The notes beneath the pieces are model-generated. The model ran no database searches, had not been told where the DNA came from, and saw only the letters and a list, made by a program, of their open reading frames with translations. Shown here in pieces: positions 8,384 through 34,620 of a stretch of DNA of 64,000 nt. Every line of letters begins with the position of its first letter. The first letter of the stretch is position 1. Position numbers and translations under genes: made by a program. The DNA lies in contig NW_003314335.1 in assembly GCF_000143415.4 (NCBI RefSeq), positions 464,113 through 528,112 of the forward strand, in the 5' to 3' direction. The DNA comes from Selaginella moellendorffii (taxonomy: Eukaryota; Plantae; Lycopodiophyta).

Positions 8384-8855
8384 GCCTGCTGTTTAAGAAC
8401 TGATGTTGTAAGCATTGATGACAAGCTCAGCCTTCCTTGTGCTGCCAACCAGTGAGCAATAACCACAAGTGTGAAAGAGAAGATCACAATCAATACCAAA
8501 ACTAAATATTGCAAGAACCACAATGCTGTCACCAACACCTGGAATTTGATTTGAAGCACAATCTTTAACTAAGATACCAGTATGACATTCACAGACAATT
8601 GGTGAAAGTATGCACCAAGTTAAGAGAATCTGAAAGAAAACAACTACCAACAAGAAGATCAATGCACCTTAAGTGTAGAAGACAACGTAGAGCAAATGAC
8701 AGAGGCCAGCCTGAACACCTTGAAGTGTATAGATGCCACCATCGCCTCTCAGAACTGCAAGCGGAAAACTTGAGAACGAGTTTCTGTACCAGTCAAAAGA
8801 TTTAGGCCGAGCCCATATTGCCTTGACACTTCTCCGGCAGCTGGTGAAGATGTCC
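8384..8855 (-). pseudogene. Relic homologous to the Fused/TIO pseudogene of the array; continues left of the LTR at about 6305-6357
   Basis: Collinear DNA similarity with about 12625-13160, e.g. gaactga-gttgtaagcat-gatgacaagctcag and agaggccagcctgaacacctt. Confidence 0.7.
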
Positions 8856-8938
8856 ATAAACTAATATAAGGCTTGATCCCGTGAGGTTGAGGCAAGAGCA
8901 AAGACAATCAGCTCTCCTACAATCTTAGTCTCCTGTGA

Positions 8939-9835
8939 TGTCTTTTAGATTGCTTCTATACATGACTCTATGACAGGAGCGCCACTATACATGGCTCCCT
9001 AGAGCAGCTTTATAACCACATGGTAGATGTATGGACTCTTGGTGTGATATTGTAAGGTTCTGTTTGTTTCACAAACAGAACGCACATTGTCATAAGTAGG
9101 AATGAACTCTATGTTGGCCAGCCTCCTTATTACTCTAACTCTGTTTACATGCTTATTCGCCATAGAGTGAAGCTAATTGTTGCAATTTTGTTATAACTTT
9201 AGCTATTGCTGTCAAGCAGGATGCACCTAATTCTCTCAACTCGAACTTCAAAAGCTTTTTGAAAACAAGGTTCGCTTACTGGGTTACCCCACAGGATGTT
9301 CATAAATTTCTAAACTGAATTGTAGACTGAATTGTTGGAGGAGATATCTGACGAAATAGCAGCACCAGTTCTTTCCAGGAGCAATGCCACTCCAGTAGCT
9401 CTCGTCATGGGTAAGAAGAGGCCATAGTTGACAAATGTGGTGCAGGAAGCAGGAGCTGCGACTGCATTTGAAAGAGGATGTGACGCTGCCTGGAAATATT
9501 GTGCTAGAATCACCTACTAATGTACTCGATCGTGCACCAATAGGAGCCAGCTCCTACCAAAAGACCAGAATCAGTGCCCTGTCCATATAATGACAGTACT
9601 ACTCAGGCATGCACAGCTCCTCTCGATAATGCTTAGTATTGATTTTCATTGTCTTTACTTTAGAGCTTTCTTGCGTACCAATGCTATTTACCCAGACTGA
9701 TGTGCTTTAACTTATGTTTTACATCCTTTTCAAAAATTTGAAGTAAAATAGTGAAGGAGCTGCAATAAGGTATGAAACTAATATTACCATTAGAGCTTTG
9801 TTACATATCAAACCAGTGGGGGACTAATTGAACCT
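8939..9835 (+). pseudogene. TIO: Fused/TIO (STK36-like) kinase fragment, locally inverted
   Basis: Reads GAPLYMAP..EQLYNHMVDVWTLGVIL, ELYVGQPPYYSNSVYMLIRH and NSNFKSFLK, with stops and frameshifts. Reverse complement of about 13235-14040. Confidence 0.8.
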
Positions 9836-11599: not shown

Positions 11600-14350
11600 A
11601 AGCTCTCGCAACCGAGCGTATGAAACCGCTGTATGGACTCAGAATGCCAATGCTCAGCAATGCTTCGATGATTTCTTCAGCTCGCTTATCTCACCTGTGA
11701 AACAATGCTCCCCACCTCAAATGCAAGCCAGGCTCACTTGAAGTACATGATCCCACTTCGGTGTTTCCTGAGAGACCATCACTGGATGCGGAGCTGAGCT
11801 CTTGCACGAGCTTTGTCACTCTGCATCTTCCGCGTTGTAGGATTGTCAAGTTGTACCATCTGCTTTTGATTGTTCTCAAAGCCTTTGAGCTTTTACCCCA
11901 TAAATTCTAAGAGAGTTGCTTCCCATCCAAGTTTGCGAGCTGGGACGAAGAAAAAACGTTACCAGCCATCGGAAGAAGAGGCACATTGCACTCTACCTTC
12001 AAGTGAGAAGCTACTTCTCCATGAAAAAGGAACTGCGGCAGTGGGGTATACATAGGATCGTCTGCTGCAAATCGAGATTCACGTAAGGAAACACTGCACT
12101 GCAGAGAAGACAGACAATTGCCTTCGCGGGACAGAAAACATCCTTTCACAGTGTCAATGGCACATGTCCTTCATGCCAAGAAACTCCAAGCATCTCACAA
12201 AAGCTGAAACGTATTAGAAAAAACAAGCTGTTCTGCAACCGAGACCTCGTGCAGAAGCTGCCAGTACAGAGACATGCTGGCGTTGATAAGTGTGGTGAAA
12301 CGCCCCGTTGTATCCTTCCCAAACTTGCAGCTGCGTTAAATGCCGCTTCGAGAGCTGAAATTGCATATAAGACGCCGGGAGGGAGATAATCCCACCACCT
12401 TCAAAGGCTTCAGTTCGGAGCAGTCATTCGCTGTCTTTGGAGTGCTTCCTAGGTAGAGATGTTCTTTTCCCATACAAACCTGTCGTCGCCATGGCTAAGA
12501 AGGCCAAGAGAGCTTTCCCAACCATGGCAACGAACTTCCTTGCATCCGAGATCACGGAGGAACGGTCTGCATTTTTTTTTCCAGCATAAGAATGGCTGCC
12601 CACAGCAGCTGAGCGAGGTTGCTCAGCTACTGTAGGAACTGAAGTTGTAAGCATCGATGACAAGCTCAGTCTTCCTTGTGCTGCCAACCCGTGAGCAATA
12701 GCCGCAAGTGTGAAAGAAAAGACCGCCGTCAATACCAGAACCTTTGTTGCCACCTCCCTGACTGCTCGCCAAATACTCAGATAGCATGCTGAATATCGCA
12801 GCAACCACAGTGCCGTCAGCACCACCTGGAGTTTGATTCGAAGCACGATCTTTTTAACTGAGATACCAGTGGACAATTGGCTAAAGTATGTACCAGGTTA
12901 AAAGAATCTTGAAACAAACAACTATCAACAAAAAAAAATCAACACACCTAAAGTGTAGAAGACAACGTAGAGCGAATGACAGAGGCCAGCCTGAACACCT
13001 TCAAGTGTATAGATGCCAATTGGACAACTTATTACTGTCGTTCTTAGCTTTCTGTCCAGCCTCTCAGAATTGACTTGAGGATGAGCTTCTTTACCAGTCA
13101 AAAGATTCAGGCCACACCCACATTGCCTACATGCTTCTCCGGAAGCTGGTCAAGACGTCCACAAATGCATATCAATCTGAAATGCTCTTTGTGATACAGC
13201 TCCTGCGCCAAATAAGGCATGCAATGGTTTATTACTCCCCCACTTGCTTGCTCACTATGTAACAAAAGCTCTGATAGTAGTACTTTGCTGCAGCTCCTTC
13301 ACTTATTTTACTTTAAATTTTGAGCAAAAGCACATCGGTCTGGGCAAACAGCATTGGCACGCGAGAAAGCTCTTATCAAGTCACGGAAACTTCTGCAGAA
13401 GGACAATGAAAAATTGTTATAGCGATAGAAGCATTACTAGCATTATCGAGAGGAGCTGTGCACGCCTGACTAGTACTGACATTAGATGGACACGGCACTG
13501 ATTCTGGTCTTTTGGTAGAAGCTGGCTCCACCTTGTGTAGTGCACGATCGTTACGTTACCCGGTGATGCTAGCACAATATTTCCAGGCAGCATCACATCC
13601 TCTTTCGAATGTAGTCGCAGCTCCCCACATTTGTCAATTATGGCCTCTTTTTAGCAATATCTTACCCATGCTGCTATTTCGTCAGATGTCAATTCAGTCC
13701 ATTCAGAAACCTATGAACGTTTTTGTTGGATCCTGCGGTAAGCGAACCTTGTTAAAGAGCCCTTTCAAAAAACTTTTGAGAGCATCAGGTGGATCCTGCT
13801 CGACAGCGATAGCTAAAGTTATAACAAAATCGCAACAATTACCTCCTGTAAACAGAGTTAGAGTAAAAAGGAGACTGGCCAACATAGAGTTCATTCCTGC
13901 TCATGACAATGCGCGTCAATGTAAAACAAACAGAACTTTACAATATCACACCAAGAGTCTGCTCTAGGGAGCCATGTATAGTGGAGCTCCTGTCACAGCG
14001 TCACGGTTTCACGAATGTATAGAAGCAATCTAAAAGACAACCTTCGATCGAGCGAAGAACCATTTGTGTTGCAAGACATGTCCACAATCGCAGAGCTGAT
14101 TCCAACAATAGACACTCACAGCATTTCACAATCCAGAAGTGGTGCCTTCACCGGCACCGATCTCCCAGTGGATGGTGTAGTGCCCGAACCTACGAGTAAG
14201 TCTTCTTAGAAAAAGTCTCGCACTAATCTTTGTCGCTCTTGCCGTGCTTGAGCATATCGTCTGGGGCATCGATCGATCAGGGGCAAACAAGAAAACAAAA
14301 ATGCAGCTCACAGAAATGCATGGCCAGTGCATCTCGTCAAAAAGCCTAGA
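11600..14350 (-). pseudogene. TIO: Decayed intron-containing Fused/TIO kinase gene (unit 1 copy); its 5' part recurs in each array unit
   Basis: In order on the minus strand: KHGKSDKD, VRALH, IGAG, LCDCG..MSCNT.MVLRSI, GAPLYMAP, ELYVGQ..YSNSVY, KSFLKGL. These match Fused/TIO kinase motifs but are broken by deletions. Extent below about 13000 is uncertain. Confidence 0.75.
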
Positions 14351-14530
14351 GCGATACCCAGAGTAGAAATTCTTCTGGTAACATTTATTTTGTATGGTAG
14401 GAATTCTTTTCTCTCTTTTTCGTTCTTGAAGGCAAGAAAATTCCCCCGTACAACGTGGCTGGGATAGAATTTCTTTCGGCCCGACCAGACATGTCCAACA
14501 GACGCTCGTAGTGCTCCTCGGATGGCATTC

Positions 14531-15670
14531 TCATTCTCCAAAACTGTCAAGGCAACTTATGCTCCAAAGCCGCACCTTCTTTGCCACAAGACTTTCCTCT
14601 GCTTCTTCCTGATCACCTCGCCTTCGCTTCAAGCCCGGCTTCAAATCCATCTCCAGACACAATTCCTGCTGTACAGCAGAATGCTTGACGACCCATGGAT
14701 GCTTCTCAATCTCATGGATTGGCAGCCTCTTTCTCGGGTCCAAGTGGAGCAGCTGGAGAATGAGATCTTTGGCTTCCTCGCTCACATCCGTCCAGTCAAG
14801 GGAGGTCACCGGCACTTCCTTCCTCCCCACCCAGAATGCAAACTGCCCCGACAATATCTCATACAAGACAATGCCCACGCCCCACACATCTACCATCTCA
14901 TCATACTCATCATCAGAATTCACCATCTCTGGGGCGCTGTAAGCCTGTGTCCCAGAAAGGTCGCTCATCCTAAACTTTACGCCTGGCCCCTCGCTCAACC
15001 AACACGTTCCAAAGTCAGCCACCTTTATGCTGTCAAATTTCTCCTTAATCCCTAGGAGGATGTTGGCAGTGTTGATATCCCTATGAGCTATTCCCATGTC
15101 GTGCATTTCGCCCACAGTCCTGGCCACTTTCTTTATCACCAGTGCTGCCTCGTGCTCACTCAGCCTCCCCTTGTCCTTCAACACATCTCGCAGCGAGCAC
15201 TGGCACAACTCCATGACAAGGTGATAGTATTCTTGTTCTTTGAAAACGTCCACTAGTTGAACCACACCACTTTTTGCTGTGCTCTTGGAGAGTTTCGTGA
15301 GTACTCTCATCTCCAACTCCGCTTGGTCTTCAAGATTGTCGGTGACTCGAATTGATTTACAAGCGAACAATTGACCGTCGCTCTTGCGTTTGATTTGGCA
15401 GACACTTGATTGGCCTCCCTGACCCAGCTCCTTTTCCACCGAGAACAAGTCTCCCATGCTTGCCTGGTTAAACTCCATCGCCTCCATAGATCGCACCAGT
15501 GCCATCTGCTCGTCCATCAATTTCCTGTGCTCCTCCATCGATTCAGTGCTCGGTGTAGCAGCTTCTTCGTCTTGTGGGGGAGGTATTTTGAGTAGCTCGT
15601 AGAGCTCCTTCAGCTTCCAAAGTGCATCAAGTAGCACCTCTTCTTGAGGCTTACCTTCGTCAAGCGCCAT
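14531..15670 (-). CDS. Intronless CAMK-group (CDPK/PPCK-related, no EF-hands) Ser/Thr kinase, 379 aa, copy 1
   Basis: LGQGGQSSV, FACKSI, HLVMELC, HRDINTANILL, IKVADFG, GTQAYSAPE, DVWGVGIVLY, SEEAKDLILQLL, HPWV. Confidence 0.9.
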   Translation of the reverse strand: MALDEGKPQEEVLLDALWKLKELYELLKIPPPQDEEAATPSTESMEEHRKLMDEQMALVRSMEAMEFNQASMGDLFSVEKELGQGGQSSVCQIKRKSDGQLFACKSIRVTDNLEDQAELEMRVLTKLSKSTAKSGVVQLVDVFKEQEYYHLVMELCQCSLRDVLKDKGRLSEHEAALVIKKVARTVGEMHDMGIAHRDINTANILLGIKEKFDSIKVADFGTCWLSEGPGVKFRMSDLSGTQAYSAPEMVNSDDEYDEMVDVWGVGIVLYEILSGQFAFWVGRKEVPVTSLDWTDVSEEAKDLILQLLHLDPRKRLPIHEIEKHPWVVKHSAVQQELCLEMDLKPGLKRRRGDQEEAEESLVAKKVRLWSISCLDSFGE

Positions 15671-15910
15671 CCCCTTGAAAGTCTGTTTAACCCTAGCCTT
15701 GATGTAGCAATTGCCTTTTTTATAATTTCCTATACCAAAAGGGCTGTGAAATGTGAAACCGCTTTTTCCACAAACAATTCTTACCTTTCTTATTCAAAAG
15801 AATCCAATACGTCTGAATAAAAGCATTAAACAAAGTGCCTAGTGACTTGGTGGAAATACTTTCTGTTTCCAAATAATCGGCGAGCATCCTATTGCTCGCA
15901 GCAAACCACC

Positions 15911-16398
15911 AACACAATGCTGTGAAAATCGCCGGCGCTTCATTCCCCGCGGTGTGGTGCGCTTGGTCTGCGCAGTGTGAGCCTGGCAACCAGCTCTGTT
16001 GAGTTCTTGGCGGCATTCACTGACAAAACCTTCACGAGGAAAGATGGAAAACGTTAATCGACTCATTCCAAGACAAACCTGTGGAATCACAATGCAATCT
16101 CCGCAATCGCCAGCTGCTCACGCAATCTCAGAGTTGTGGCCTGCTCTCGGAATCATGCCCAGATTTTCCAGTTACACCGACAACGGAGCCTTGACACCAA
16201 GTTCTCGGAGTGGAGAAAAGGATTTGGCACTGGAACTTTTCTCCATCATGCTGGATCAAGGACGCGAGAATCTTTGTGGCTGTTCTTGGTGCCTGCGCGC
16301 GGGAGAAGACGGCAGGGAGCTGGCTGGGTAAATGATGAACGTGCAGTCAGTCGGGACACGAGAAAAAAAAAACACACACACACACACGTCCAAAGCTC
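15911..16398 (-). pseudogene. Degenerate CCT1 fragment interrupted by a plus-strand PPR fragment (about 16200-16300); repeated in each unit
   Basis: Matches 32185-32495 (cttggcggcattcactgacaaaaccttcacg; ctccgcaatcgccagctgctcacgc) including intron sequence. The insert reads GEKDLALELFSIMLDQG...IFVAVLGACA. Confidence 0.8.
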
Positions 16399-18706
16399 CG
16401 AGACCTCGTGCAGAAGCTGCCAGTACAGGGACATGATGGCGTTGATAAGTGTGGTGAAAAGCCCCGTTGTATCCTTCCCAAACTTGCAGCTGCGTTAAAT
16501 GCCGCTTCGAGAGCTGAAATTGCATATAAGACGCCGGGAGGGAGATAATCCCACCACCTTCAAAGGCTTCAGTTCGGAGCAGTCATTCGCTGTCTTTGGA
16601 GTGCTTCCTAGATAGAGATGTTCTTTTCCCATGCAAACCTGTCGTCGCCATGGCTAAGAAGGCCCAGAGAGCTTTCCAAACCATGGCAACGAACTTCCTT
16701 GCATCCGAGATCACGGAGGAACGGTCTGCATTTCTTTTCCAGCATAAGAATCGCTGCCCACAGCAGCTGAGCGAGGTCGCTCAGCTACTGTAGGAACTGA
16801 CGTTGTAAGCATCGATGACAAGCTCAGTCTTCCTTGTGCTGCCAACCCGTGAGCAATAGCCGCAAGTGTGAAAGAAAAGACCGCCGTCAATACCAGAACC
16901 TTTGTTGCCACCTCCCTGACTGCTCGCCAAATACTCAGATAGCATGCTGAATATCGCAGCAACCACAGTGCCGTCAGCACCACCTGGAGTTTGATTCGAA
17001 GCACGATCTTTTTAACTGAGATACCAGTGGACAATTGGCTAAAGTATGTACCAGGTTAAAAGAATCTTGAAACAAACAACTATCAACAGAAAAAAATCAA
17101 CAAACACACCTAAAGTGTAGAAGACAACGTAGAGCGAATGTAAGAGGCCAGCCTGAACACCTTCAAGTGTATACATGCCAATTGGACAACTTGTTACTGT
17201 CGTTCTTAGCTTTCTGTCCAGCCTCTCAGAATTAACTTGAGGATGAGCTTCTTTACCAGTCAAAAGATTTAGGCCACACCCACATTGCCTACATGCTTCT
17301 CCGGAAGCTGGTCAAGACGTCCACAAATGCATATCAATCTGAAACGCTCTTTGTGATACAGCTCCTGCGCCAAATAAGGCACGCAATGGTTTAGTAGTCC
17401 CCCACTTGCTTGCTCACTATGTAACAAAAGCTCCGATAGTAGTACTTTGCTGCAGCTCCTTCACTTATTTTACTTCAAATTTTGAGCAAAAGCACATCGG
17501 TCTGGGCAAACAGCATTGGCACGCGAGAAAGCTCTTATCAAGTCACGGAAACTTCTGCAGAAGGACAACGAAAAATTGTTATAGCGATGGAAGCATTACC
17601 AGCATTATCGAGAGGAGCTGTGCACGCCTGACTAGGACTGACATTAGATGGACACGGCACTGATTCTGGTCTTTTGGTAGGAGCTGGCTCCACCTTGTGT
17701 AGTGCACGATCGTTACGTTAGCCGTTAGCCGTTAGCCCGTGATGCTAGCACAATATTTCCAGGCAGCATCACATCCTCTTTCGAATGTAGTCGCAGCTCC
17801 TCACATTTGTCAATTATGGCCACTTTTTAGCAATATCTTACCCGTGCTGCTATTTCGTCAGATGTCAATTCAGTCCATTCAGAAACCTATGAACGTTTTT
17901 GTTGGATCCTGCGGTAAGCGAACCTTGTTAAAGAGCCCTTTCAAAAAACTTTTGAGAGCATCAGGTGGATCCTGCTCGACAGCGATAGCTAAAGTTATAA
18001 CAAAATCGCAACAATTACCTCCTGTAAACAGAGTTAGAGTAAAAAGGAGGCTGGCCAACATAGAGTTCATTCCTGCTCATGACAATGCGCGTCAATGTAA
18101 AACAAACAGAACTTTACAATGTCACACCAAGAGTCTGCTCTAGGGAGCCATGTATAGTGGAGCTCCTGTCATAGCGTCACGGTTTCACGAATGTATAGAA
18201 GCAATCTAAAAGACAACCTTCGATCGAGCGAAGAGCCATTTGTGTTGCAAGACATGTCCACAATCGCAGAGCTGATTCCAACAATAGGCACTCACAGGAT
18301 TTCACAATCCAGATTTGGTGCCTTCGCCGGCACCGATCTCCCAGTGGATGGTGTAGTGCCCGAACCTACGAGTAAGTCTTCTTAGAAAAAGTCTCGCACT
18401 AATCTTTGTCGCTCTTGCCGTGCTTGAGCATATCGTCTGGGGCATCGATCGATCAGGGGCAAACAAGAAAACAAAAATGCAGCTCACAGAAATGCATGGC
18501 CAGTGCATCTCGTCAAAAAGCCTAGAGCGATACCCAGAGTAGAAATTCTTCTGGTAACATTTATTTTGTATGGTAGGAATTCTTTTCTCTCTTTTTCGTT
18601 CTTGAAGGCAAGAAAATTCCCCCGTACAACGTGGCTGGGATAGAATTTCTTTCGGCCCGACCAGACATGTCCAACAGACGCTCGTAGTGCTCCTCGGATG
18701 GCATTC

Positions 18707-19846
18707 TCATTCTCCAAAACTGTCAAGGCAACTTATGCTCCAAAGCCGCACCTTCTTTGCCACAAGACTTTCCTCTGCTTCTTCCTGATCACCTCGCCTT
18801 CGCTTCAAGCCCGGCTTCAAATCCATCTCCAGACACAATTCCTGCTGTACAGCAGAATGCTTGACGACCCATGGATGCTTCTCAATCTCATGGATTGGCA
18901 GCCTCTTTCTCGGGTCCAAGTGGAGCAGCTGGAGAATGAGATCTTTGGCTTCCTCGCTCACATCCGTCCAGTCAAGGGAGGTCACCGGCACTTCCTTCCT
19001 CCCCACCCAGAATGCAAACTGCCCCGACAATATCTCATACAAGACAATGCCCACGCCCCACACATCTACCATCTCATCATACTCATCATCAGAATTCACC
19101 ATCTCTGGGGCGCTGTAAGCCTGTGTCCCAGAAAGGTCGCTCATCCTAAACTTTACGCCTGGCCCCTCGCTCAACCAACACGTTCCAAAGTCAGCCACCT
19201 TTATGCTGTCAAATTTCTCCTTAATCCCTAGGAGGATGTTGGCAGTGTTGATATCCCTATGAGCTATTCCCATGTCGTGCATTTCGCCCACAGTCCTGGC
19301 CACTTTCTTCATCACCAGTGCTGCCTCGTGCTCACTCAGCCTCCCCTTGTCCTTCAACACATCTCGCAGCGAGCACTGGCACAACTCCATGACAAGGTGA
19401 TGGTATTCTTGTTCTTTGAAAACGTCCACTAGTTGAACCACACCACTTTTTGCTGTGCTCTTGGAGAGTTTCGTGAGTACTCTCATCTCTAACTCCGCTT
19501 GGTCTTCAAGATTGTCAGTGACCCGAATTGATTTACAAGCGAACAATTGACCGTCGCTCTTGCGTTTGATTTGGTAGACACTTGATTGGCCTCCCTGACC
19601 CAGCTCCTTTTCCACCGAGAACAAGTCTCCCATGCTTGCCTGGTTAAACTCCATCGCCTCCATAGATCGCACCAGTGCCATCTGCTCGTCCATCAATTTC
19701 CTGTGCTCCTCCATCGATTCAGTGCTCGGTGTAGCAGCTTCTTCCTCTTGTGGGGGAGGTATTTTGAGTAGCTCGTAGAGCTCCTTCAGCTTCCAAAGTG
19801 CATCAAGTAGCACCTCTTCTTGAGGCTTACCTTCGTCAAGCGCCAT
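18707..19846 (-). CDS. Intronless CAMK-group kinase, copy 2
   Basis: 379-aa ORF with 4 amino-acid differences from copy 1. Confidence 0.9.
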   Translation of the reverse strand: MALDEGKPQEEVLLDALWKLKELYELLKIPPPQEEEAATPSTESMEEHRKLMDEQMALVRSMEAMEFNQASMGDLFSVEKELGQGGQSSVYQIKRKSDGQLFACKSIRVTDNLEDQAELEMRVLTKLSKSTAKSGVVQLVDVFKEQEYHHLVMELCQCSLRDVLKDKGRLSEHEAALVMKKVARTVGEMHDMGIAHRDINTANILLGIKEKFDSIKVADFGTCWLSEGPGVKFRMSDLSGTQAYSAPEMVNSDDEYDEMVDVWGVGIVLYEILSGQFAFWVGRKEVPVTSLDWTDVSEEAKDLILQLLHLDPRKRLPIHEIEKHPWVVKHSAVQQELCLEMDLKPGLKRRRGDQEEAEESLVAKKVRLWSISCLDSFGE

Positions 19847-22800
19847 CCCCTTGAAAGTCTGTTTAACCCTAGCCTTGATGTAGCAATTGCCTTTTTTATA
19901 ATTTCCTATACCAAAAGGGCTGTGAAATGTGAAACCGCTTTTTCCACAAACAATTCTTACCTTTCTTATTCAAAAGAATCCAATACGTCTGAATAAAAGC
20001 ATTAAACAAAGTGCCTAGTGACTTGGTGGAAATACTTTCTGTTTCCAAATAATCGGCGAGCATCCTATTGCTCGCAGCAAACCACCAACACAATGCTGTG
20101 AAAATCGCCGGCGCTTCATTCCCCGCGGTGTGGTGCGCTTGGTCTGCGCAGTGTGAGCCTGGCAACCAGCTCTGTTGAGTTCTTGGCGGCATTCACTGAC
20201 AAAACCTTCACGAGGAAAGATGGAAAACGTTAATCGACTCATTCCAAGACAAACCTGTGGAATCACAATGCAATCTCCGCAATCGCCAGCTGCTCACGCA
20301 ATCTCAGAGTTGTGGCCTGCTCTCGGAATCATGCCCAGATTTTCCAGTTACACCGACAACGGAGCCTTGACACCAAGTTCTCGGAGTGGAGAAAAGGATT
20401 TGGCACTGGAACTTTTCTCCATCATGCTGGATCAAGGACGCGAGAATCTTTGTGGCTGTTCTTGGTGCCTGCGCGCGGGAGAAGACGGCAGGGAGCTGGC
20501 TGGGTAAATGATGAACGTGCAGTCAGTCGGGACACGAGAAAAAAAAAACACACACACACACACGTCCAAAGCTCCGAGACCTCGTGCAGAAGCTGCCAGT
20601 ACAGGGACATGATGGCGTTGATAAGTATGGTGAAAAGCCCCGTTGTATCCTTCCCAAACTTGCAGCTGCGTTAAATGCCGCTTCGAGAGCTGAAATTGCA
20701 TATAAGACGCCGGGAGGGAGATAATCCCACCACCTTCAAAGGCTTCAGTTCGGAGCAGTCATTCGCTGTCTTTGGAGTGCTTCCTAGATAGAGATGTTCT
20801 TTTCCCATGCAAACCTGTCGTCGCCATGGCTAAGAAGGCCCAGAGAGCTTTCCAAACCATGGCAACGAACTTCCTTGCATCCGAGATCACGGAGGAACGG
20901 TCTGCATTTCTTTTCCAGCATAAGAATCGCTGCCCACAGCAGCTGAGCGAGGTCGCTCAGCTACTGTAGGAACTGACGTTGTAAGCATCGATGACAAGCT
21001 CAGTCTTCCTTGTGCTGCCAACCCGTGAGCAATAGCCGCAAGTGTGAAAGAAAAGACCGCCGTCAATACCAGAACCTTTGTTGCCACCTCCCTGACTGCT
21101 CGCCAAATACTCAGATAGCATGCTGAATATCGCAGCAACCACAGTGCCGTCAGCACCACCTGGAGTTTGATTCGAAGCACGATCTTTTTAACTGAGATAC
21201 CAGTGGACAATTGGCTAAAGTATGTACCAGGTTAAAAGAATCTTGAAACAAACAACTATCAACAGAAAAAAATCAACAAACACACCTAAAGTGTAGAAGA
21301 CAACGTAGAGCGAATGTAAGAGGCCAGCCTGAACACCTTCAAGTGTATACATGCCAATTGGACAACTTGTTACTGTCGTTCTTAGCTTTCTGTCCAGCCT
21401 CTCAGAATTAACTTGAGGATGAGCTTCTTTACCAGTCAAAAGATTTAGGCCACACCCACATTGCCTACATGCTTCTCCGGAAGCTGGTCAAGACGTCCAC
21501 AAATGCATATCAATCTGAAACGCTCTTTGTGATACAGCTCCTGCGCCAAATAAGGCACGCAATGGTTTAGTAGTCCCCCACTTGCTTGCTCACTATGTAA
21601 CAAAAGCTCCGATAGTAGTACTTTGCTGCAGCTCCTTCACTTATTTTACTTCAAATTTTGAGCAAAAGCACATCGGTCTGGGCAAACAGCATTGGCACGC
21701 GAGAAAGCTCTTATCAAGTCACGGAAACTTCTGCAGAAGGACAACGAAAAATTGTTATAGCGATGGAAGCATTACCAGCATTATCGAGAGGAGCTGTGCA
21801 CGCCTGACTAGGACTGACATTAGATGGACACGGCACTGATTCTGGTCTTTTGGTAGGAGCTGGCTCCACCTTGTGTAGTGCACGATCGTTACGTTAGCCG
21901 TTAGCCGTTAGCCCGTGATGCTAGCACAATATTTCCAGGCAGCATCACATCCTCTTTCGAATGTAGTCGCAGCTCCTCACATTTGTCAATTATGGCCACT
22001 TTTTAGCAATATCTTACCCGTGCTGCTATTTCGTCAGATGTCAATTCAGTCCATTCAGAAACCTATGAACGTTTTTGTTGGATCCTGCGGTAAGCGAACC
22101 TTGTTAAAGAGCCCTTTCAAAAAACTTTTGAGAGCATCAGGTGGATCCTGCTCGACAGCGATAGCTAAAGTTATAACAAAATCGCAATAATTACCTCCTG
22201 TAAACAGAGTTAGAGTAAAAAGGAGGCTGGCCAACATAGAGTTCATTCCTGCTCATGACAATGCGCGTCAATGTAAAACAAACAGAACTTTACAATGTCA
22301 CACCAAGAGTCTGCTCTAGGGAGCCATGTATAGTGGAGCTCCTGTCATAGCGTCACGGTTTCACGAATGTATAGAAGCAATCTAAAAGACAACCTTCGAT
22401 CGAGCGAAGAGCCATTTGTGTTGCAAGACATGTCCACAATCGCAGAGCTGATTCCAACAATAGGCACTCACAGGATTTCACAATCCAGATTTGGTGCCTT
22501 CGCCGGCACCGATCTCCCAGTGGATGGTGTAGTGCCCGAACCTACGAGTAAGTCTTCTTAGAAAAAGTCTCGCACTAATCTTTGTCGCTCTTGCCGTGCT
22601 TGAGCATATCGTCTGGGGCATCGATCGATCAGGGGCAAACAAGAAAACAAAAATGCAGCTCACAGAAATGCATGGCCAGTGCATCTCGTCAAAAAGCCTA
22701 GAGCGATACCCAGAGTAGAAATTCTTCTGGTAACATTTATTTTGTATGGTAGGAATTCTTTTCTCTCTTTTTCGTTCTTGAAGGCAAGAAAATTCCCCCG

Positions 22801-22882
22801 TACAACGTGGCTGGGATAGAATTTCTTTCGGCCCGACCAGACATGTCCAACAGACGCTCGTAGTGCTCCTCGGATGGCATTC

Positions 22883-24022
22883 TCATTCTCCAAAACTGTC
22901 AAGGCAACTTATGCTCCAAAGCCGCACCTTCTTTGCCACAAGACTTTCCTCTGCTTCTTCCTGATCACCTCGCCTTCGCTTCAAGCCCGGCTTCAAATCC
23001 ATCTCCAGACACAATTCCTGCTGTACAGCAGAATGCTTGACGACCCATGGATGCTTCTCAATCTCATGGATTGGCAGCCTCTTTCTCGGGTCCAAGTGGA
23101 GCAGCTGGAGAATGAGATCTTTGGCTTCCTCGCTCACATCCGTCCAGTCAAGGGAGGTCACCGGCACTTCCTTCCTCCCCACCCAGAATGCAAACTGCCC
23201 CGACAATATCTCATACAAGACAATGCCCACGCCCCACACATCTACCATCTCATCATACTCATCATCAGAATTCACCATCTCTGGGGCGCTGTAAGCCTGT
23301 GTCCCAGAAAGGTCGCTCATCCTAAACTTTACGCCTGGCCCCTCGCTCAACCAACACGTTCCAAAGTCAGCCACCTTTATGCTGTCAAATTTCTCCTTAA
23401 TCCCTAGGAGGATGTTGGCAGTGTTGATATCCCTATGAGCTATTCCCATGTCGTGCATTTCGCCCACAGTCCTGGCCACTTTCTTCATCACCAGTGCTGC
23501 CTCGTGCTCACTCAGCCTCCCCTTGTCCTTCAACACATCTCGCAGCGAGCACTGGCACAACTCCATGACAAGGTGATGGTATTCTTGTTCTTTGAAAACG
23601 TCCACTAGTTGAACCACACCACTTTTTGCTGTGCTCTTGGAGAGTTTCGTGAGTACTCTCATCTCTAACTCCGCTTGGTCTTCAAGATTGTCAGTGACCC
23701 GAATTGATTTACAAGCGAACAATTGACCGTCGCTCTTGCGTTTGATTTGGTAGACACTTGATTGGCCTCCCTGACCCAGCTCCTTTTCCACCGAGAACAA
23801 GTCTCCCATGCTTGCCTGGTTAAACTCCATCGCCTCCATAGATCGCACCAGTGCCATCTGCTCGTCCATCAATTTCCTGTGCTCCTCCATCGATTCAGTG
23901 CTCGGTGTAGCAGCTTCTTCCTCTTGTGGGGGAGGTATTTTGAGTAGCTCGTAGAGCTCCTTCAGCTTCCAAAGTGCATCAAGTAGCACCTCTTCTTGAG
24001 GCTTACCTTCGTCAAGCGCCAT
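22883..24022 (-). CDS. Intronless CAMK-group kinase, copy 3
   Basis: Protein identical to copy 2 in the ORF track. Confidence 0.9.
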   Translation of the reverse strand: MALDEGKPQEEVLLDALWKLKELYELLKIPPPQEEEAATPSTESMEEHRKLMDEQMALVRSMEAMEFNQASMGDLFSVEKELGQGGQSSVYQIKRKSDGQLFACKSIRVTDNLEDQAELEMRVLTKLSKSTAKSGVVQLVDVFKEQEYHHLVMELCQCSLRDVLKDKGRLSEHEAALVMKKVARTVGEMHDMGIAHRDINTANILLGIKEKFDSIKVADFGTCWLSEGPGVKFRMSDLSGTQAYSAPEMVNSDDEYDEMVDVWGVGIVLYEILSGQFAFWVGRKEVPVTSLDWTDVSEEAKDLILQLLHLDPRKRLPIHEIEKHPWVVKHSAVQQELCLEMDLKPGLKRRRGDQEEAEESLVAKKVRLWSISCLDSFGE

Positions 24023-27000
24023 CCCCTTGAAAGTCTGTTTAACCCTAGCCTTGATGTAGCAATTGCCTTTTTTATAATTTCCTATACCAAAAGGGCTGTG
24101 AAATGTGAAACCGCTTTTTCCACAAACAATTCTTACCTTTCTTATTCAAAAGAATCCAATACGTCTGAATAAAAGCATTAAACAAAGTGCCTAGTGACTT
24201 GGTGGAAATACTTTCTGTTTCCAAATAATCGGCGAGCATCCTATTGCTCGCAGCAAACCACCAACACAATGCTGTGAAAATCGCCGGCGCTTCATTCCCC
24301 GCGGTGTGGTGCGCTTGGTCTGCGCAGTGTGAGCCTGGCAACCAGCTCTGTTGAGTTCTTGGCGGCATTCACTGACAAAACCTTCACGAGGAAAGATGGA
24401 AAACGTTAATCGACTCATTCCAAGACAAACCTGTGGAATCACAATGCAATCTCCGCAATCGCCAGCTGCTCACGCAATCTCAGAGTTGTGGCCTGCTCTC
24501 GGAATCATGCCCAGATTTTCCAGTTACACCGACAACGGAGCCTTGACACCAAGTTCTCGGAGTGGAGAAAAGGATTTGGCACTGGAACTTTTCTCCATCA
24601 TGCTGGATCAAGGACGCGAGAATCTTTGTGGCTGTTCTTGGTGCCTGCGCGCGGGAGAAGACGGCAGGGAGCTGGCTGGGTAAATGATGAACGTGCAGTC
24701 AGTCGGGACACGAGAAAAAAAAAACACACACACACACACGTCCAAAGCTCCGAGACCTCGTGCAGAAGCTGCCAGTACAGGGACATGATGGCGTTGATAA
24801 GTATGGTGAAAAGCCCCGTTGTATCCTTCCCAAACTTGCAGCTGCGTTAAATGCCGCTTCGAGAGCTGAAATTGCATATAAGACGCCGGGAGGGAGATAA
24901 TCCCACCACCTTCAAAGGCTTCAGTTCGGAGCAGTCATTCGCTGTCTTTGGAGTGCTTCCTAGATAGAGATGTTCTTTTCCCATGCAAACCTGTCGTCGC
25001 CATGGCTAAGAAGGCCCAGAGAGCTTTCCAAACCATGGCAACGAACTTCCTTGCATCCGAGATCACGGAGGAACGGTCTGCATTTCTTTTCCAGCATAAG
25101 AATCGCTGCCCACAGCAGCTGAGCGAGGTCGCTCAGCTACTGTAGGAACTGACGTTGTAAGCATCGATGACAAGCTCAGTCTTCCCTGTGCTGCCAACCC
25201 GTGAGCAATAGCCGCAAGTGTGAAAGAAAAGACCGCCGTCAATACCAGAACCTTTGTTGCCACCTCCCTGACTGCTCGCCAAATACTCAGATAGCATGCT
25301 GAATATCGCAGCAACCACAGTGCCGTCAGCACCACCTGGAGTTTGATTCGAAGCACGATCTTTTTAACTGAGATACCAGTGGACAATTGGCTAAAGTATG
25401 TACCAGGTTAAAAGAATCTTGAAACAAACAACTATCAACAGAAAAAAATCAACAAACACACCTAAAGTGTAGAAGACAACGTAGAGCGAATGTAAGAGGC
25501 CAGCCTGAACACCTTCAAGTGTATACATGCCAATTGGACAACTTGTTACTGTCGTTCTTAGCTTTCTGTCCAGCCTCTCAGAATTAACTTGAGGATGAGC
25601 TTCTTTACCAGTCAAAAGATTTAGGCCACACCCACATTGCCTACATGCTTCTCCGGAAGCTGGTCAAGACGTCCACAAATGCATATCAATCTGAAACGCT
25701 CTTTGTGATACAGCTCCTGCGCCAAATAAGGCACGCAATGGTTTAGTAGTCCCCCACTTGCTTGGTCACTATGTAACAAAAGCTCCGATAGTAGTACTTT
25801 GCTGCAGCTCCTTCACTTATTTTACTTCAAATTTTGAGCAAAAGCACATCGGTCTGGGCAAACAGCATTGGCACGCGAGAAAGCTCTTATCAAGTCACGG
25901 AAACTTCTGCAGAAGGACAACGAAAAATTGTTATAGCGATGGAAGCATTACCAGCATTATCGAGAGGAGCTGTGCACGCCTGACTAGGACTGACATTAGA
26001 TGGACACGGCACTGATTCTGGTCTTTTGGTAGGAGCTGGCTCCACCTTGTGTAGTGCACGATCGTTACGTTAGCCGTTAGCCGTTAGCCCGTGATGCTAG
26101 CACAATATTTCCAGGCAGCATCACATCCTCTTTCGAATGTAGTCGCAGCTCCTCACATTTGTCAATTATGGCCACTTTTTAGCAATATCTTACCCGTGCT
26201 GCTATTTCGTCAGATGTCAATTCAGTCCATTCAGAAACCTATGAACGTTTTTGTTGGATCCTGCGGTAAGCGAACCTTGTTAAAGAGCCCTTTCAAAAAA
26301 CTTTTGAGAGCATCAGGTGGATCCTGCTCGACAGCGATAGCTAAAGTTATAACAAAATCGCAATAATTACCTCCTGTAAACAGAGTTAGAGTAAAAAGGA
26401 GGCTGGCCAACATAGAGTTCATTCCTGCTCATGACAATGCGCGTCAATGTAAAACAAACAGAACTTTACAATGTCACACCAAGAGTCTGCTCTAGGGAGC
26501 CATGTATAGTGGAGCTCCTGTCATAGCGTCACGGTTTCACGAATGTATAGAAGCAATCTAAAAGACAACCTTCGATCGAGCGAAGAGCCATTTGTGTTGC
26601 AAGACATGTCCACAATCGCAGAGCTGATTCCAACAATAGGCACTCACAGGATTTCACAATCCAGATTTGGTGCCTTCGCCGGCACCGATCTCCCAGTGGA
26701 TGGTGTAGTGCCCGAACCTACGAGTAAGTCTTCTTAGAAAAAGTCTCGCACTAATCTTTGTCGCTCTTGCCGTGCTTGAGCATATCGTCTGGGGCATCGA
26801 TCGATCAGGGGCAAACAAGAAAACAAAAATGCAGCTCACAGAAATGCATGGCCAGTGCATCTCGTCAAAAAGCCTAGAGCGATACCCAGAGTAGAAATTC
26901 TTCTGGTAACATTTATTTTGTATGGTAGGAATTCTTTTCTCTCTTTTTCGTTCTTGAAGGCAAGAAAATTCCCCCGTACAACGTGGCTGGGATAGAATTT

Positions 27001-27058
27001 CTTTCGGCCCGACCAGACATGTCCAACAGACGCTCGTAGTGCTCCTCGGATGGCATTC

Positions 27059-28198
27059 TCATTCTCCAAAACTGTCAAGGCAACTTATGCTCCAAAGCCG
27101 CACCTTCTTTGCCACAAGACTTTCCTCTGCTTCTTCCTGATCACCTCGCCTTCGCTTCAAGCCCGGCTTCAAATCCATCTCCAGACACAATTCCTGCTGT
27201 ACAGCAGAATGCTTGACGACCCATGGATGCTTCTCAATCTCATGGATTGGCAGCCTCTTTCTCGGGTCCAAGTGGAGCAGCTGGAGAATGAGATCTTTGG
27301 CTTCCTCGCTCACATCCGTCCAGTCAAGGGAGGTCACCGGCACTTCCTTCCTCCCCACCCAGAATGCAAACTGCCCCGACAATATCTCATACAAGACAAT
27401 GCCCACGCCCCACACATCTACCATCTCATCATACTCATCATCAGAATTCACCATCTCTGGGGCGCTGTAAGCCTGTGTCCCAGAAAGGTCGCTCATCCTA
27501 AACTTTACGCCTGGCCCCTCGCTCAACCAACACGTTCCAAAGTCAGCCACCTTTATGCTGTCAAATTTCTCCTTAATCCCTAGGAGGATGTTGGCAGTGT
27601 TGATATCCCTATGAGCTATTCCCATGTCGTGCATTTCGCCCACAGTCCTGGCCACTTTCTTCATCACCAGTGCTGCCTCGTGCTCACTCAGCCTCCCCTT
27701 GTCCTTCAACACATCTCGCAGCGAGCACTGGCACAACTCCATGACAAGGTGATGGTATTCTTGTTCTTTGAAAACGTCCACTAGTTGAACCACACCACTT
27801 TTTGCTGTGCTCTTGGAGAGTTTCGTGAGTACTCTCATCTCTAACTCCGCTTGGTCTTCAAGATTGTCAGTGACCCGAATTGATTTACAAGCGAACAATT
27901 GACCGTCGCTCTTGCGTTTGATTTGGTAGACACTTGATTGGCCTCCCTGACCCAGCTCCTTTTCCACCGAGAACAAGTCTCCCATGCTTGCCTGGTTAAA
28001 CTCCATCGCCTCCATAGATCGCACCAGTGCCATCTGCTCGTCCATCAATTTCCTGTGCTCCTCCATCGATTCAGTGCTCGGTGTAGCAGCTTCTTCCTCT
28101 TGTGGGGGAGGTATTTTGAGTAGCTCGTAGAGCTCCTTCAGCTTCCAAAGTGCATCAAGTAGCACCTCTTCTTGAGGCTTACCTTCGTCAAGCGCCAT
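27059..28198 (-). CDS. Intronless CAMK-group kinase, copy 4
   Basis: Protein identical to copy 2 in the ORF track. Confidence 0.9.
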   Translation of the reverse strand: MALDEGKPQEEVLLDALWKLKELYELLKIPPPQEEEAATPSTESMEEHRKLMDEQMALVRSMEAMEFNQASMGDLFSVEKELGQGGQSSVYQIKRKSDGQLFACKSIRVTDNLEDQAELEMRVLTKLSKSTAKSGVVQLVDVFKEQEYHHLVMELCQCSLRDVLKDKGRLSEHEAALVMKKVARTVGEMHDMGIAHRDINTANILLGIKEKFDSIKVADFGTCWLSEGPGVKFRMSDLSGTQAYSAPEMVNSDDEYDEMVDVWGVGIVLYEILSGQFAFWVGRKEVPVTSLDWTDVSEEAKDLILQLLHLDPRKRLPIHEIEKHPWVVKHSAVQQELCLEMDLKPGLKRRRGDQEEAEESLVAKKVRLWSISCLDSFGE

Positions 28199-28439
28199 CC
28201 CCTTGAAAGTCTGTTTAACCCTAGCCTTGATGTAGCAATTGCCTTTTTTATAATTTCCTATACCAAAAGGGCTGTGAAATGTGAAACCGCTTTTTCCACA
28301 AACAATTCTTACCTTTCTTATTCAAAAGAATCCAATACGTCTGAATAAAAGCATTAAACAAAGTGCCTAGTGACTTGGTGGAAATACTTTTTGTTTCCAA
28401 ATAATCGGCGAGCATCCTATTGCTCGCAGCAAACCACCA

Positions 28440-29165
28440 ACACAATGCTGTGAGAATCGCCGGCGCTTCATTCCCCGCGGTGTGGTGCGCTTGGTCTGCG
28501 CAGTGTGAGCCTGGCAACCAGCTCTGTTGAGTTCTTGGCGGCATTCACTGACAAAACCTTCACGAGGAAAGATGGAAAACGTTAATCGACTCATTCCAAG
28601 ACAAACCTGTGGAATCACAATGCAATCTCCGCAATCGCCAGCTGCTCACGCAATCTCAGAGTTGTGGCCTGCTCTCGGAATCATGCCCAGATTTTCCAGT
28701 TACACCGACAACGGAGCCTTGACACCAAGTTCTCGGAGTGGAGAAAAGGATTTGGCACTGGAACTTTTCTCCATCATGCTGGATCAAGGACGCGAGAATC
28801 TTTGTGGCTGTTCTTGGTGCCTGCGCGCGGGAGAAGACGGCAGGGAGCTGGCTGGGTAAATGATGAACGTGCAGTCAGTCGGGACACGAGAAAAAAAAAA
28901 CACACACACACACGTCCAAAGCTCACATACCGCATTAGTGGGATATTTTGTCTCTCGCGTTAACAGTCTTCGCAGGCTGGACCGCATCGACGACATAGCC
29001 GATCTTGCAATGAGAATGTTCTTTACCGATTTGGCACTGTCTGTGGACGACATGCTTGTTTTCGAGCAGTTGATTAGAGTCTTCTCCAGTTTTTCGACCT
29101 GTGTCCAAAATTTAAAACGATATCACTCACAATCGCAGAGAATGGAACTTTAAGTTCCAACCTTT
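28440..29165 (-). pseudogene. Longer CCT1 relic extending beyond the array end
   Basis: 28921-28934 matches 32567-32580. 28935-29165 matches 33496-33765 (gggatattt..gttaacagtctt, gacatgcttgttttcg, agtttttcgacctg.gtccaaaa) with introns kept and internal deletions. Confidence 0.8.
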
Positions 29166-34474: not shown

Positions 34475-34620
34475 CACTCTCGCAGTCACAAGCTCAAAAA
34501 GAAACTAGGGCACAGAGGGATATTCCAGGAATCTTATTTACTAAGTGATTAAGATTAATTTAATTCAAGCGCAAAGGGATATTCCAAGATTATGGTTTAT
34601 TACAAAGTACCAGGTTAAGG

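What the first reader, a model, noticed from the sequence alone, without database searches (positions are those of the whole stretch)
12241..28924. Recently amplified 4.18-kb cassette: one intact kinase surrounded by dead gene fragments
Seen: four head-to-tail units. Each has decayed Fused/TIO, a 379-aa intronless kinase, a CCT1 relic and a PPR relic, and only the kinase frame is intact. A TATAAA lies about 50 bp upstream of its ATG, with a telo-like tagggtt in the leader. Inference: the kinase is the selected payload, a young retrogene-like gene amplified for dosage or hitch-hiking in a capture element. This is the best candidate here for an undescribed system.
Basis: partly seen in the sequence, partly recalled or inferred. 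Interest (0 to 1): 0.8.

Follow-up and report, generated by a model that had tools for sequence, protein, structure and literature searches.

The report
Young tandem array of spikemoss kinase gene
One chromosome copy of the spikemoss Selaginella moellendorffii carries four head-to-tail copies of a 4.18-kb segment holding an intact kinase gene where the other copy carries one, which is an ordinary recent tandem gene duplication and not a new genetic system.

Summary
The four-unit array is real. It spans 12239-28925: U1 is 4159 bp and U2-U4 are 4176 bp each. U2-U4 differ from each other at 2-6 sites, and U1 differs from them by 1.2%. Each unit holds an intact, intronless 379-aa protein-kinase ORF on the minus strand. 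Each also holds a decayed, intron-bearing piece of the neighbouring CCT1 (TCP-1 alpha) gene. The TATAAA at -54 and the tagggtt are present. I found no Fused/TIO or PPR relic.

The window is S. moellendorffii scaffold GL377639.1. The collinear counterpart on GL377570.1, most likely the second assembled haplotype, has the same flanks but one unit. It shows the pre-duplication state and a 1-bp microhomology at the new junction. The unit has no terminal repeats, target-site duplication, poly(A) tract, tRNA or Rfam hit.

All paralogues of this Selaginella-only kinase family are intronless, so this is not a young retrogene or a capture element.

The kinase shows purifying selection (dN/dS about 0.24 between haplotypes, P=0.0008). 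It has an unusual Asn in place of the catalytic-loop Lys (HRDINTAN).

Verdict: an ordinary haplotype-specific tandem gene amplification, later homogenised by gene conversion. Copy number still needs read-depth confirmation.

The parts
12239..28925 (.). Whole tandem array of four head-to-tail units
   Evidence: Self-BLAST, 12.5-kb off-diagonal match at 99.4%; unit alignment
12239..16397 (.). Unit U1 (4159 bp), 98.7-98.8% identical to U2-U4, with 4-bp and 14-bp deletions
16398..20573 (.). Unit U2 (4176 bp)
   Evidence: 2 differences from U3
20574..24749 (.). Unit U3 (4176 bp)
24750..28925 (.). Unit U4 (about 4176 bp), with 4-6 private differences and a (CA)n one repeat shorter
14531..15670 (-). 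Kinase copy 1, 379 aa, intact; differs from copies 2-4 at 7 nt / 4 aa (positions 34, 91, 149, 179)
18707..19846 (-). Kinase copy 2, 379 aa, identical to copies 3 and 4; catalytic loop HRDINTAN
22883..24022 (-). Kinase copy 3, 379 aa
27059..28198 (-). Kinase copy 4, 379 aa; swallowed by the 890-aa GenBank model EFJ12437.1 and the 476-aa RefSeq model XP_024516227.1
20072..20382 (-). CCT1 (TCP-1 alpha) pseudogene piece in U2, covering about residues 419-500 plus a small intron, frameshifted. Equivalents: 15896-16206, 24248-24558, 28424-28734
29009..29163 (-). More 5' piece of the same CCT1 pseudogene (matches CCT1 exon at 33539-33757), just outside the array. The right breakpoint of the duplication lies inside this pseudogene
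31941..34500 (-). Intact parental-type CCT1 / TCP-1 alpha gene (544 aa in the annotation); approximate limits
16791..17327 (.). Segment A of the unit, an old (about 70% identity) direct copy of left-flank 8394-8860; unidentified, with no frame-specific conservation
17395..18215 (.). Segment B of the unit, an old (about 68% identity) inverted copy of left-flank 8939-9826; contains a 244-bp inversion relative to the other haplotype
8394..9826 (.). Left-flank counterparts (A', B') of segments A and B
19895..19900 (-). TATAAA 54 bp upstream of the ATG of copy 2 (same position in every unit); tagggtt at 19866-19872
20539..20563 (+). A10(CA)n microsatellite 10 bp from the unit's right end (the right breakpoint)
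20572..20575 (.). Novel junction AAAGCT|CCGAGACC, identical at all three internal joins (16397/16398, 20573/20574, 24749/24750)

Best explanation
This is a young tandem gene amplification that differs between the two assembled haplotypes of Selaginella moellendorffii. A 4.18-kb stretch was first duplicated head to tail by a non-homologous event with 1-bp microhomology, next to an A10(CA)n microsatellite. The stretch holds a complete single-exon kinase gene with 727 bp of its own upstream sequence, plus old non-coding debris: the 3' part of a CCT1 pseudogene and decayed copies of left-flank DNA. The array then grew to four copies by unequal crossing-over between units and was partly homogenised by gene conversion (inferred from the mosaic pattern). 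The kinase belongs to a small, fast-evolving, intronless, Selaginella-restricted clade of CAMK-like (CDPK/PPCK-superfamily) Ser/Thr kinases. They lack EF hands and have a conserved C-terminal basic motif that looks like a bipartite nuclear localisation signal (inferred). All copies at this locus, including the single copy on the other haplotype scaffold, carry Asn instead of the catalytic-loop Lys (HRDINTAN). They still evolve under purifying selection, so the protein is probably functional, perhaps with altered or weak catalysis. Each unit carries promoter-proximal sequence and the full CDS, so the likely consequence is higher gene dosage on that haplotype. Whether that dosage is selected or neutral is unknown.
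For: The array and its unit identities are shown. The ORFs are intact and match Pkinase at E=1e-54. The best solved-structure matches are CaMKI/II/IV and CDPKs at E about 1e-34. No EF-hand family was hit, and the predicted C-terminal tail 334-379 is disordered. The genome and scaffold are identified. The collinear region L009 on GL377570.1 carries the same genes: melibiase, cupin, DUF7148, kinase, CCT1, ADH, DUF604. It has one unit only and the same flanks. Right-flank substitution identity is 98.5%. The pre-duplication junctions in L009 against the novel junction in the array give 1-bp microhomology. There are no inverted repeats of 20 bp or more, no tRNA and no Rfam family. The paralogues are intronless: P0004 is 349 aa in 1050 bp, P0005 is 365 aa in 1098 bp, and L003 is one 462-codon ORF. 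The family forms a 100/100 clade on a long stem, and the next relatives are at 37% identity or less. Between array copy 2 and the L009 copy there are 12 synonymous and 11 nonsynonymous differences, omega about 0.24, binomial P=0.0008. Omega against paralogues is about 0.3. The units are a mosaic. Two tracts of 0.6-0.98 kb have zero differences between U1 and U2-4, next to tracts with about 2% difference. In one tract U1 is closer to L009 (2 differences) than to U2 (7 differences). Literature context: the S. moellendorffii assembly mixes two haplotypes, and gene pairs with the same neighbours are treated as alleles (PMC3095285). Selaginella has no WGD, S. moellendorffii has 6693 tandem duplicates, and these are enriched for kinase activity (PMC5750206).
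Against: Copy number rests on a Sanger-era assembly. Read depth could not be checked, so U2-U4 (2-6 differences) could be over- or under-counted, and the single copy on GL377570.1 could be a collapsed repeat. That GL377570.1 is the allelic haplotype, and not a very recent segmental duplicate, is inferred from 36 kb of collinearity and about 2% divergence; it is not proven. No expression data were available. The catalytic-loop Lys-to-Asn change could mean reduced or lost activity. Using flanking non-coding divergence (about 2%) as the neutral yardstick makes the evidence for constraint weaker than using dS does.
Confidence: 0.8

Rival explanations
1. Assembly artefact. The true locus has fewer (or more) copies on this haplotype, or the other haplotype's single copy is a collapsed array, so the 4-versus-1 contrast is not real.
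For: U2-U4 differ at only 2-6 positions, which is the regime where assemblers miscount. The assembly mixes two haplotypes. No read data were available.
Against: The window has no Ns. U1 and U2-4 are distinct sequence types, and both differ from the separately assembled second haplotype. A diploid plant therefore must carry at least two units on this haplotype. U4 has private variants, two of which are the ancestral states shared with L009. The novel junction sequence occurs three times with consistent context.
Confidence: 0.12
2. Gene-capture transposon (Pack-MULE, Helitron or similar), or rolling-circle amplification of a mobile cassette that picked up fragments of several genes plus the kinase.
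For: The unit mixes an intact gene with fragments of another gene (CCT1) and unidentified debris. The three junctions are identical.
Against: There are no terminal inverted repeats of 20 bp or more. There is no target-site duplication and no 5'-TC...CTRR-3' ends. The non-kinase parts do not occur at the paralogue loci. The other haplotype carries one unit in exactly the same context, so the segment is resident DNA and not an insertion. The CCT1 relic continues outside the array at 29009-29163, so the breakpoint cuts a pre-existing pseudogene. The source sequences of the fragments lie within 4-12 kb in the same window.
Confidence: 0.03
3. Young retrogene. The kinase was recently retroposed from an intron-containing parent and then amplified.
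For: It is a single-exon CDS with a TATA-like element close to the ATG. CDPK-type genes normally contain introns (general knowledge).
Against: Every paralogue down to 45% identity is also intronless, so intron loss is old and family-wide. The nearest paralogue is only 65% identical. There is no poly(A) remnant after the stop and there are no flanking direct repeats. The adjacent CCT1 relic retains an intron, which indicates DNA-level copying in this neighbourhood.
Confidence: 0.03
4. Adaptive dosage amplification. The four copies are maintained by selection for more kinase product (for example a stress or immune role), and are not a neutral copy-number polymorphism.
For: The CDS is under purifying selection. 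Every unit keeps 727 bp of upstream sequence and a complete ORF. Differences between U1 and U2 are fewer in the CDS than in the rest of the unit (7/1140 vs 42/3019, Fisher P=0.037). Tandem duplicates in Selaginella are enriched for kinases.
Against: The expansion is too recent for selection to have left a readable signal (U1 vs U2: 4 nonsynonymous and 3 synonymous differences, not significant). Gene conversion alone explains the homogeneity. There are no expression or population data, and the other haplotype manages with one copy.
Confidence: 0.2

Closest known systems
Tandemly arrayed genes / copy-number polymorphism by non-homologous duplication followed by unequal crossing-over and gene conversion (abundant in Selaginella; PMC5750206)
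   Same: The units join head to tail at one repeated junction. The array is a near-identical young expansion with mosaic conversion tracts. There is a single-copy allele with the same flanks. The gene class (kinase) is the one reported as enriched among Selaginella tandem duplicates.
   Different: Nothing essential differs. The only particular features are that the breakpoints fall in a CCT1 pseudogene and beside a microsatellite.
PPCK / PEPRK branch of the CDPK-SnRK superfamily ('B6' calmodulin-fused-kinase group; PMC5482843 counts 18 in S. moellendorffii, the most of any species sampled)
   Same: It is a CAMK-like kinase domain without an autoinhibitory junction or EF hands. It has short N- and C-terminal extensions, as in PEPRK. 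It is plant-specific.
   Different: Identity to any non-Selaginella protein retrieved is 37% or less. The clade sits on a very long branch, and its position relative to PPCK/PEPRK was not tested. The catalytic-loop Lys is replaced by Asn at this locus. The genes are intronless.
CDPK (RefSeq names the paralogues 'calcium-dependent protein kinase 14/33-like')
   Same: These are the best named sequence matches outside Selaginella (34% identity) and strong matches among solved structures.
   Different: There is no calmodulin-like EF-hand domain and no junction helix, so the protein is not a CDPK in the functional sense.
Pack-MULE / Helitron gene-fragment capture
   Same: One stretch holds a mosaic of one gene plus fragments of others.
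   Different: It has no transposon termini, no TSD and no dispersed copies among the loci examined. The fragments derive from immediately adjacent DNA and predate the amplification.

Membership tests
Eukaryotic protein kinase (Pfam PF00069) | Full-length kinase domain match above the gathering score | tested here: met
   183-186 bits against a cut-off of 31.7, covering profile positions 2-263 of 263. The AlphaFold2 model gives a confident bilobal kinase core at residues 70-333.
Eukaryotic protein kinase (catalytically competent) | Gly-rich loop, beta3 Lys, alphaC Glu, HRD Asp, catalytic-loop Lys (HRDxKxxN), DFG, APE | tested here: inconclusive
   GQGGQS, FACK, ELEMR, HRD, DFG and SAPE are present. 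The catalytic-loop Lys is Asn (HRDINTAN) in all five copies, whereas all paralogues and 116 of 127 retrieved kinases have Lys. Activity was not assayed.
CDPK | C-terminal calmodulin-like domain with EF hands after an autoinhibitory junction | tested here: not met
   No EF-hand Pfam family was hit. The protein ends about 50 residues after the kinase domain, and the tail is predicted to be disordered.
PPCK/PEPRK (B6 CFK group) | Kinase-only architecture lacking the autoinhibitory domain and the calmodulin-like domain | tested here: met
PPCK/PEPRK (B6 CFK group) | Phylogenetic grouping with bona fide PPCK/PEPRK | not tested
   No PPCK or PEPRK reference sequence was returned by any tool. The tree only shows a separate, long-stemmed Selaginella clade.
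Tandem segmental duplication | Head-to-tail units sharing one novel junction, and flanks that are contiguous with a single unit in a homologous chromosome | tested here: met
Retrogene | Intronless copy of an intron-containing parent, with a poly(A) remnant, target-site duplication and a new genomic location | tested here: not met
   It is intronless, but so is the whole family. There is no poly(A) tract or TSD. The locus is the same on both haplotypes.
Pack-MULE / Helitron capture element | Terminal inverted repeats plus a 9-10-bp TSD, or 5'-TC...CTRR-3' ends with a 3' hairpin inserted at AT | tested here: not met
   There are no inverted repeats of 20 bp or more. The ends read CCGAGA...AAAGCT(C), with no TSD.

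The most novel reading that the evidence does not exclude
The amplified gene encodes a Selaginella-specific, probably nuclear CAMK-like protein that has lost the catalytic-loop lysine (HRDINTAN) yet stays under purifying selection. That would make it an atypical kinase or a signalling pseudokinase. Its four-fold amplification on one haplotype would be a dosage adaptation. It might also use a new 5' exon exapted from the frame-shifted CCT1 pseudogene, as the RefSeq isoform X1 model suggests.
Probability: 0.1. Interest if true: 0.45.

Novelty: new member of a known kind. Interest (0 to 1): 0.2.

Why it matters
It matters little beyond the species. It gives a base-pair-resolved example of how a tandem gene array is born and grows in a plant lineage that has no whole-genome duplications and relies on local duplication for new genes. 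The example includes the pre-duplication allele, a 1-bp microhomology junction, later unequal exchange and gene conversion. It also flags mis-annotated fusion gene models (890 aa and 476 aa). It points to a lineage-specific kinase clade with an unusual catalytic-loop substitution that could be tested biochemically.

Tried and rejected
I scanned all open pieces of the unit outside the kinase against Pfam. Nothing relevant came up: no PPR, ARM/HEAT, kinase or TCP-1. The CCT1 relic was found only by comparison with the neighbouring true gene.

An ESM Atlas look-up of the longest minus-strand piece of segment A gave no usable hit and a low 'recognition' value, consistent with non-coding DNA.

Segments A and B are conserved equally in all frames between the unit copy and the flank copy. 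I treated them as non-coding and did not spend the large HMMER search on them. I also judged that search unnecessary for the kinase after the word search.

The other kinase in the window (43651-44748) is CDK-like, not Fused/TIO.

Searches of papers for the locus tags and accessions found nothing. The supplement of PMC5482843 holds no gene IDs. The Banks et al. genome paper was not held.

I abandoned dating the duplication from divergence because the units are mosaics.

I assembled and searched no joined (spliced) model of CCT1 or of the RefSeq isoform. Only single open pieces were searched, by reference.
Full report
**1. The observation**

Self-BLAST of the window gives a 12.5-kb off-diagonal match at 99.4% with a 4176-bp offset. 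The period is too long for Tandem Repeats Finder, which found nothing there. The array runs from 12239 to 28925. It has four units: U1 12239-16397 (4159 bp), U2 16398-20573, U3 20574-24749 and U4 24750-28925.

U2, U3 and U4 differ from each other at 2-6 positions. U1 differs from them at 49-55 substitutions plus a 4-bp and a 14-bp indel, which is 98.7-98.8% identity. The window contains no Ns.

Each unit has one long ORF on the minus strand, 379 codons: 14531-15670, 18707-19846, 22883-24022 and 27059-28198. Copies 2-4 are identical. Copy 1 differs at 7 nt and 4 aa.

**2. What the kinase is**

The ORF is a complete protein-kinase domain: Pfam PF00069, E=1e-54, covering profile positions 2-263 of 263. 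The best solved relatives are CaMKIV/I/II and apicomplexan or plant CDPKs at about 1e-34. No EF-hand family is hit.

An AlphaFold2 model gives a confident kinase core at residues 70-333. It also gives two low-confidence N-terminal helices and a disordered C-terminal tail.

The word-based protein search identifies the organism as Selaginella moellendorffii. It shows a small family confined to that species:

| Protein | Identity | Note |
|---|---|---|
| P0002 | 65% | same scaffold |
| P0003 | 60% | |
| P0006 | 59% | |
| P0004 | 58% | |
| P0005 | 45% | |

The next hits are a Diphasiastrum protein at 37% and angiosperm CDPKs at 34%. In a maximum-likelihood tree the Selaginella proteins form a 100/100 clade on a very long stem. 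The array copies plus their counterpart on the other scaffold form a 100/100 subclade.

The paralogues share a C-terminal LKRRRGDQEEAEES-VAKK motif. I read this as a candidate bipartite nuclear localisation signal; that is inference.

All paralogues have HRDIK in the catalytic loop, whereas every copy at this locus has HRDINTAN. Asn occurs only in models of this locus and in two unrelated metagenomic proteins. From general knowledge, this Lys contacts the gamma-phosphate in Ser/Thr kinases. Activity may therefore be altered, but this was not tested.

**3. Not a young retrogene**

- P0004 is 349 aa in a 1050-bp gene.
- P0005 is 365 aa in a 1098-bp gene.
- The P0002 locus has one uninterrupted 462-codon ORF.
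- The P0003 locus (L004) carries frameshifts and a stop codon. The P0006 locus (L007) carries a frameshift and has its 3' part inverted. Both are pseudogenes.

Intronlessness is therefore a property of the whole clade. The nearest paralogue is only 65% identical. There is no A-rich remnant after the stop codon, and no direct repeats flank the gene or the unit.

**4. What else is in the unit**

The window is GL377639.1, record positions 459937-523936. Directly to the right of the array lie three minus-strand genes: a gene of unknown function (29.2-31.6 kb), the intact T-complex protein 1 alpha (CCT1) gene (about 31941-34500) and a zinc-ADH-like gene. An exon-bearing piece of the CCT1 gene matches residues 413-476 of TCP-1 alpha chains at E=4e-17.

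U2 20072-20382, and its equivalents in the other units, aligns to 32134-32598 of that gene. The match covers two exon parts and the small intron between them, with frameshifts, at about 71% DNA identity. A more 5' piece of the same pseudogene lies just outside the array at 29009-29163 and matches the CCT1 exon at 33539-33757. So a pre-existing, internally deleted, intron-containing CCT1 pseudogene sits upstream of the kinase. The right breakpoint of the duplication cuts through it.

Two further stretches of the unit are old copies of left-flank DNA:
- Segment A, 16791-17327, is a direct copy of 8394-8860 at about 70% identity.
- Segment B, 17395-18215, is an inverted copy of 8939-9826 at about 68% identity.

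Both are conserved equally in all reading frames. They have no Pfam match, and the protein language model does not recognise them as protein. I could not identify their origin.

I found no Fused/TIO or PPR relic:
- 85 open pieces of at least 26 aa gave no PPR, ARM/HEAT or kinase hit.
- No second kinase-like stretch appears when the kinase is masked.
- The plus-strand frame with PPR-like wording is the antisense of the CCT1 relic.

Pfam also failed to see the verified CCT1 relic, so these negatives are not strong. The 24-kb region 8000-32000 has no Rfam family and no tRNA. The stretch 11500-21500, which covers U1, U2 and the left junction, has no inverted repeat of 20 bp or more.

**5. The decisive comparison**

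One member of the kinase's 90% cluster (EFJ34089.1) lies on another scaffold, GL377570.1. Its locus, L009, is collinear with window 2017-38035. It carries the same genes: melibiase, cupin, DUF7148, kinase, CCT1, ADH and DUF604. It contains exactly one unit.

Substitution identity between the two scaffolds is as follows:

| Region | Value |
|---|---|
| Right flank | 98.5% identity |
| Left flank | 95.6% identity |
| Most parts of the unit | 1.7-3.7% divergence |
| Segment B | carries a 244-bp inversion |

The published assembly is known to contain both haplotypes of the sequenced plant, and gene pairs with the same neighbours are treated as alleles (PMC3095285). L009 is therefore most likely the second haplotype.

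L009 preserves the pre-duplication state:
- Left side: ...GTTCTGCAA|CCGAGACC...
- Right side: ...GTCCAAAGCT|CACATACC...
- The three internal joins of the array: AAAGCT|CCGAGACC

This leaves a single shared C as microhomology. An A10(CA)n microsatellite lies 10 bp from the right breakpoint. The L009 kinase is intact (382 aa, 96% identical) and also has HRDINTAN.

**6. History and mechanism**

The first event was a non-homologous head-to-tail duplication; the junction shows this, and the mechanism class is inferred. Further growth to four units by unequal crossing-over between units is inferred from the identical junctions and the near-identity of U2-U4.

The units are mosaics:
- U1 and U2-4 are identical over 18327-19309 and 19746-20573 (U2 coordinates).
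- They are about 2% different over 16398-18326.
- Over 19310-19846, U1 is closer to L009 (2 differences) than to U2 (7 differences).
- U4 keeps two ancestral states, shared with L009, near its right end.

This pattern indicates gene conversion. The founding duplication may also have arisen by exchange between already diverged homologues. Simple divergence dating is therefore unreliable, and I give no age.

**7. Selection**

| Comparison | Synonymous | Nonsynonymous | omega | Test |
|---|---|---|---|---|
| Array copy 2 vs L009 | 12 | 11 | about 0.24 | one-sided binomial P=0.0008 |
| Array copy 1 vs L009 | 9 | 9 | | P=0.005 |
| Copy 1 vs copy 2 | 3 | 4 | | not significant |

Pairwise omega against the paralogues is about 0.3. 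Nonsynonymous divergence (1.2%) is also below the flanking non-coding divergence (about 2%), but only modestly so. The gene is therefore constrained. The amplification itself is too young to show a signal of selection.

**8. Annotation notes**

GenBank annotates copies 1-3 as 379-aa genes. It fuses copy 4 with the upstream gene and the CCT1 pseudogene pieces into an 890-aa model, EFJ12437.1.

RefSeq XP_024516227.1 (476 aa, 'probable myosin light chain kinase DDB_G0292624 isoform X1') adds a 5' exon that is a frame-shifted reading of the CCT1 relic. That upstream ORF is open in all five copies. It shows 4 amino-acid changes in about 76 codons between the haplotypes, so there is no sign of constraint on it.

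**9. Comparison with what is known**

Selaginella lacks whole-genome duplications. S. moellendorffii has 6693 tandem duplicates, and these are enriched for kinase activity (PMC5750206). A survey of the CDPK-related superfamily counted 18 PPCK/PEPRK-group genes in S. moellendorffii, the most of any species sampled (PMC5482843). This family and its two-haplotype representation may contribute to that number, but no gene IDs were available to check.

Earlier notes of this scan report several other kinase arrays in the same genome. No paper mentions the locus tags.

The finding is therefore a well-resolved but ordinary instance of tandem gene amplification. It is not a mobile capture element, not a young retrogene and not a new system. 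The residual interest lies in the catalytic-loop Lys-to-Asn change in a constrained, lineage-specific kinase.

**10. Limits**

Copy numbers on both scaffolds depend on the assembly. The allelic status of GL377570.1 is inferred. Expression, activity and localisation are untested. The origin of segments A and B is unknown. Placement relative to PPCK/PEPRK was not tested.

Noticed in passing
window 6358-8383 (tandem repeat 6591-7388): A stretch of about 2 kb, with a 35-bp (also 93-bp and 209-bp period) GC-rich tandem repeat array, is present here but absent from the collinear scaffold L009. It is a haplotype-specific insertion or deletion.
   Followed up: partly
window 13315-13558 (and the equivalent position in each unit): A 244-bp segment is inverted relative to the other haplotype scaffold (97.5% identity in reverse orientation).
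   Followed up: partly
window 27059-31632 minus strand: The GenBank 890-aa model EFJ12437.1 is a chimera of an upstream gene of unknown function, CCT1-pseudogene pieces and kinase copy 4. On the other haplotype the upstream gene is annotated separately (284 aa).
   Followed up: partly
window 43651-44748 plus strand: This is a long single ORF encoding a CDK-like (CMGC) kinase, with best PDB matches CDK2/3/5 at 1e-40. It is unrelated to the array kinase.
   Followed up: partly
window 46607-48206 and 53573-55108: A 1.6-kb inverted repeat pair at 92% identity.
   Followed up: no
window 9870-10260 and 10379-10747: A 390-bp inverted repeat pair at 78% identity in the left flank, also present in L009.
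   Followed up: no
L004 8019-9070 and L007 6651-8939: The paralogues P0003 and P0006 are pseudogenes: frameshifts and a stop in L004, and a frameshift plus inversion of the 3' part in L007. Both loci share WEMBL and NERD neighbours, so they may be another haplotype pair.
   Followed up: partly
L003 7900-9288: The paralogue at the P0002 locus is one 462-codon ORF. Its N-terminus has about three tandem repeats of a roughly 30-aa unit (LPEVDK-LQ-IVRADEHLYSV-ADRWPW). The annotated 467-aa spliced model differs from this ORF.
   Followed up: no
proteins P0028 and P0060: Two unrelated metagenomic kinases also carry HRDIN in the catalytic loop, so loss of this Lys recurs.
   Followed up: no
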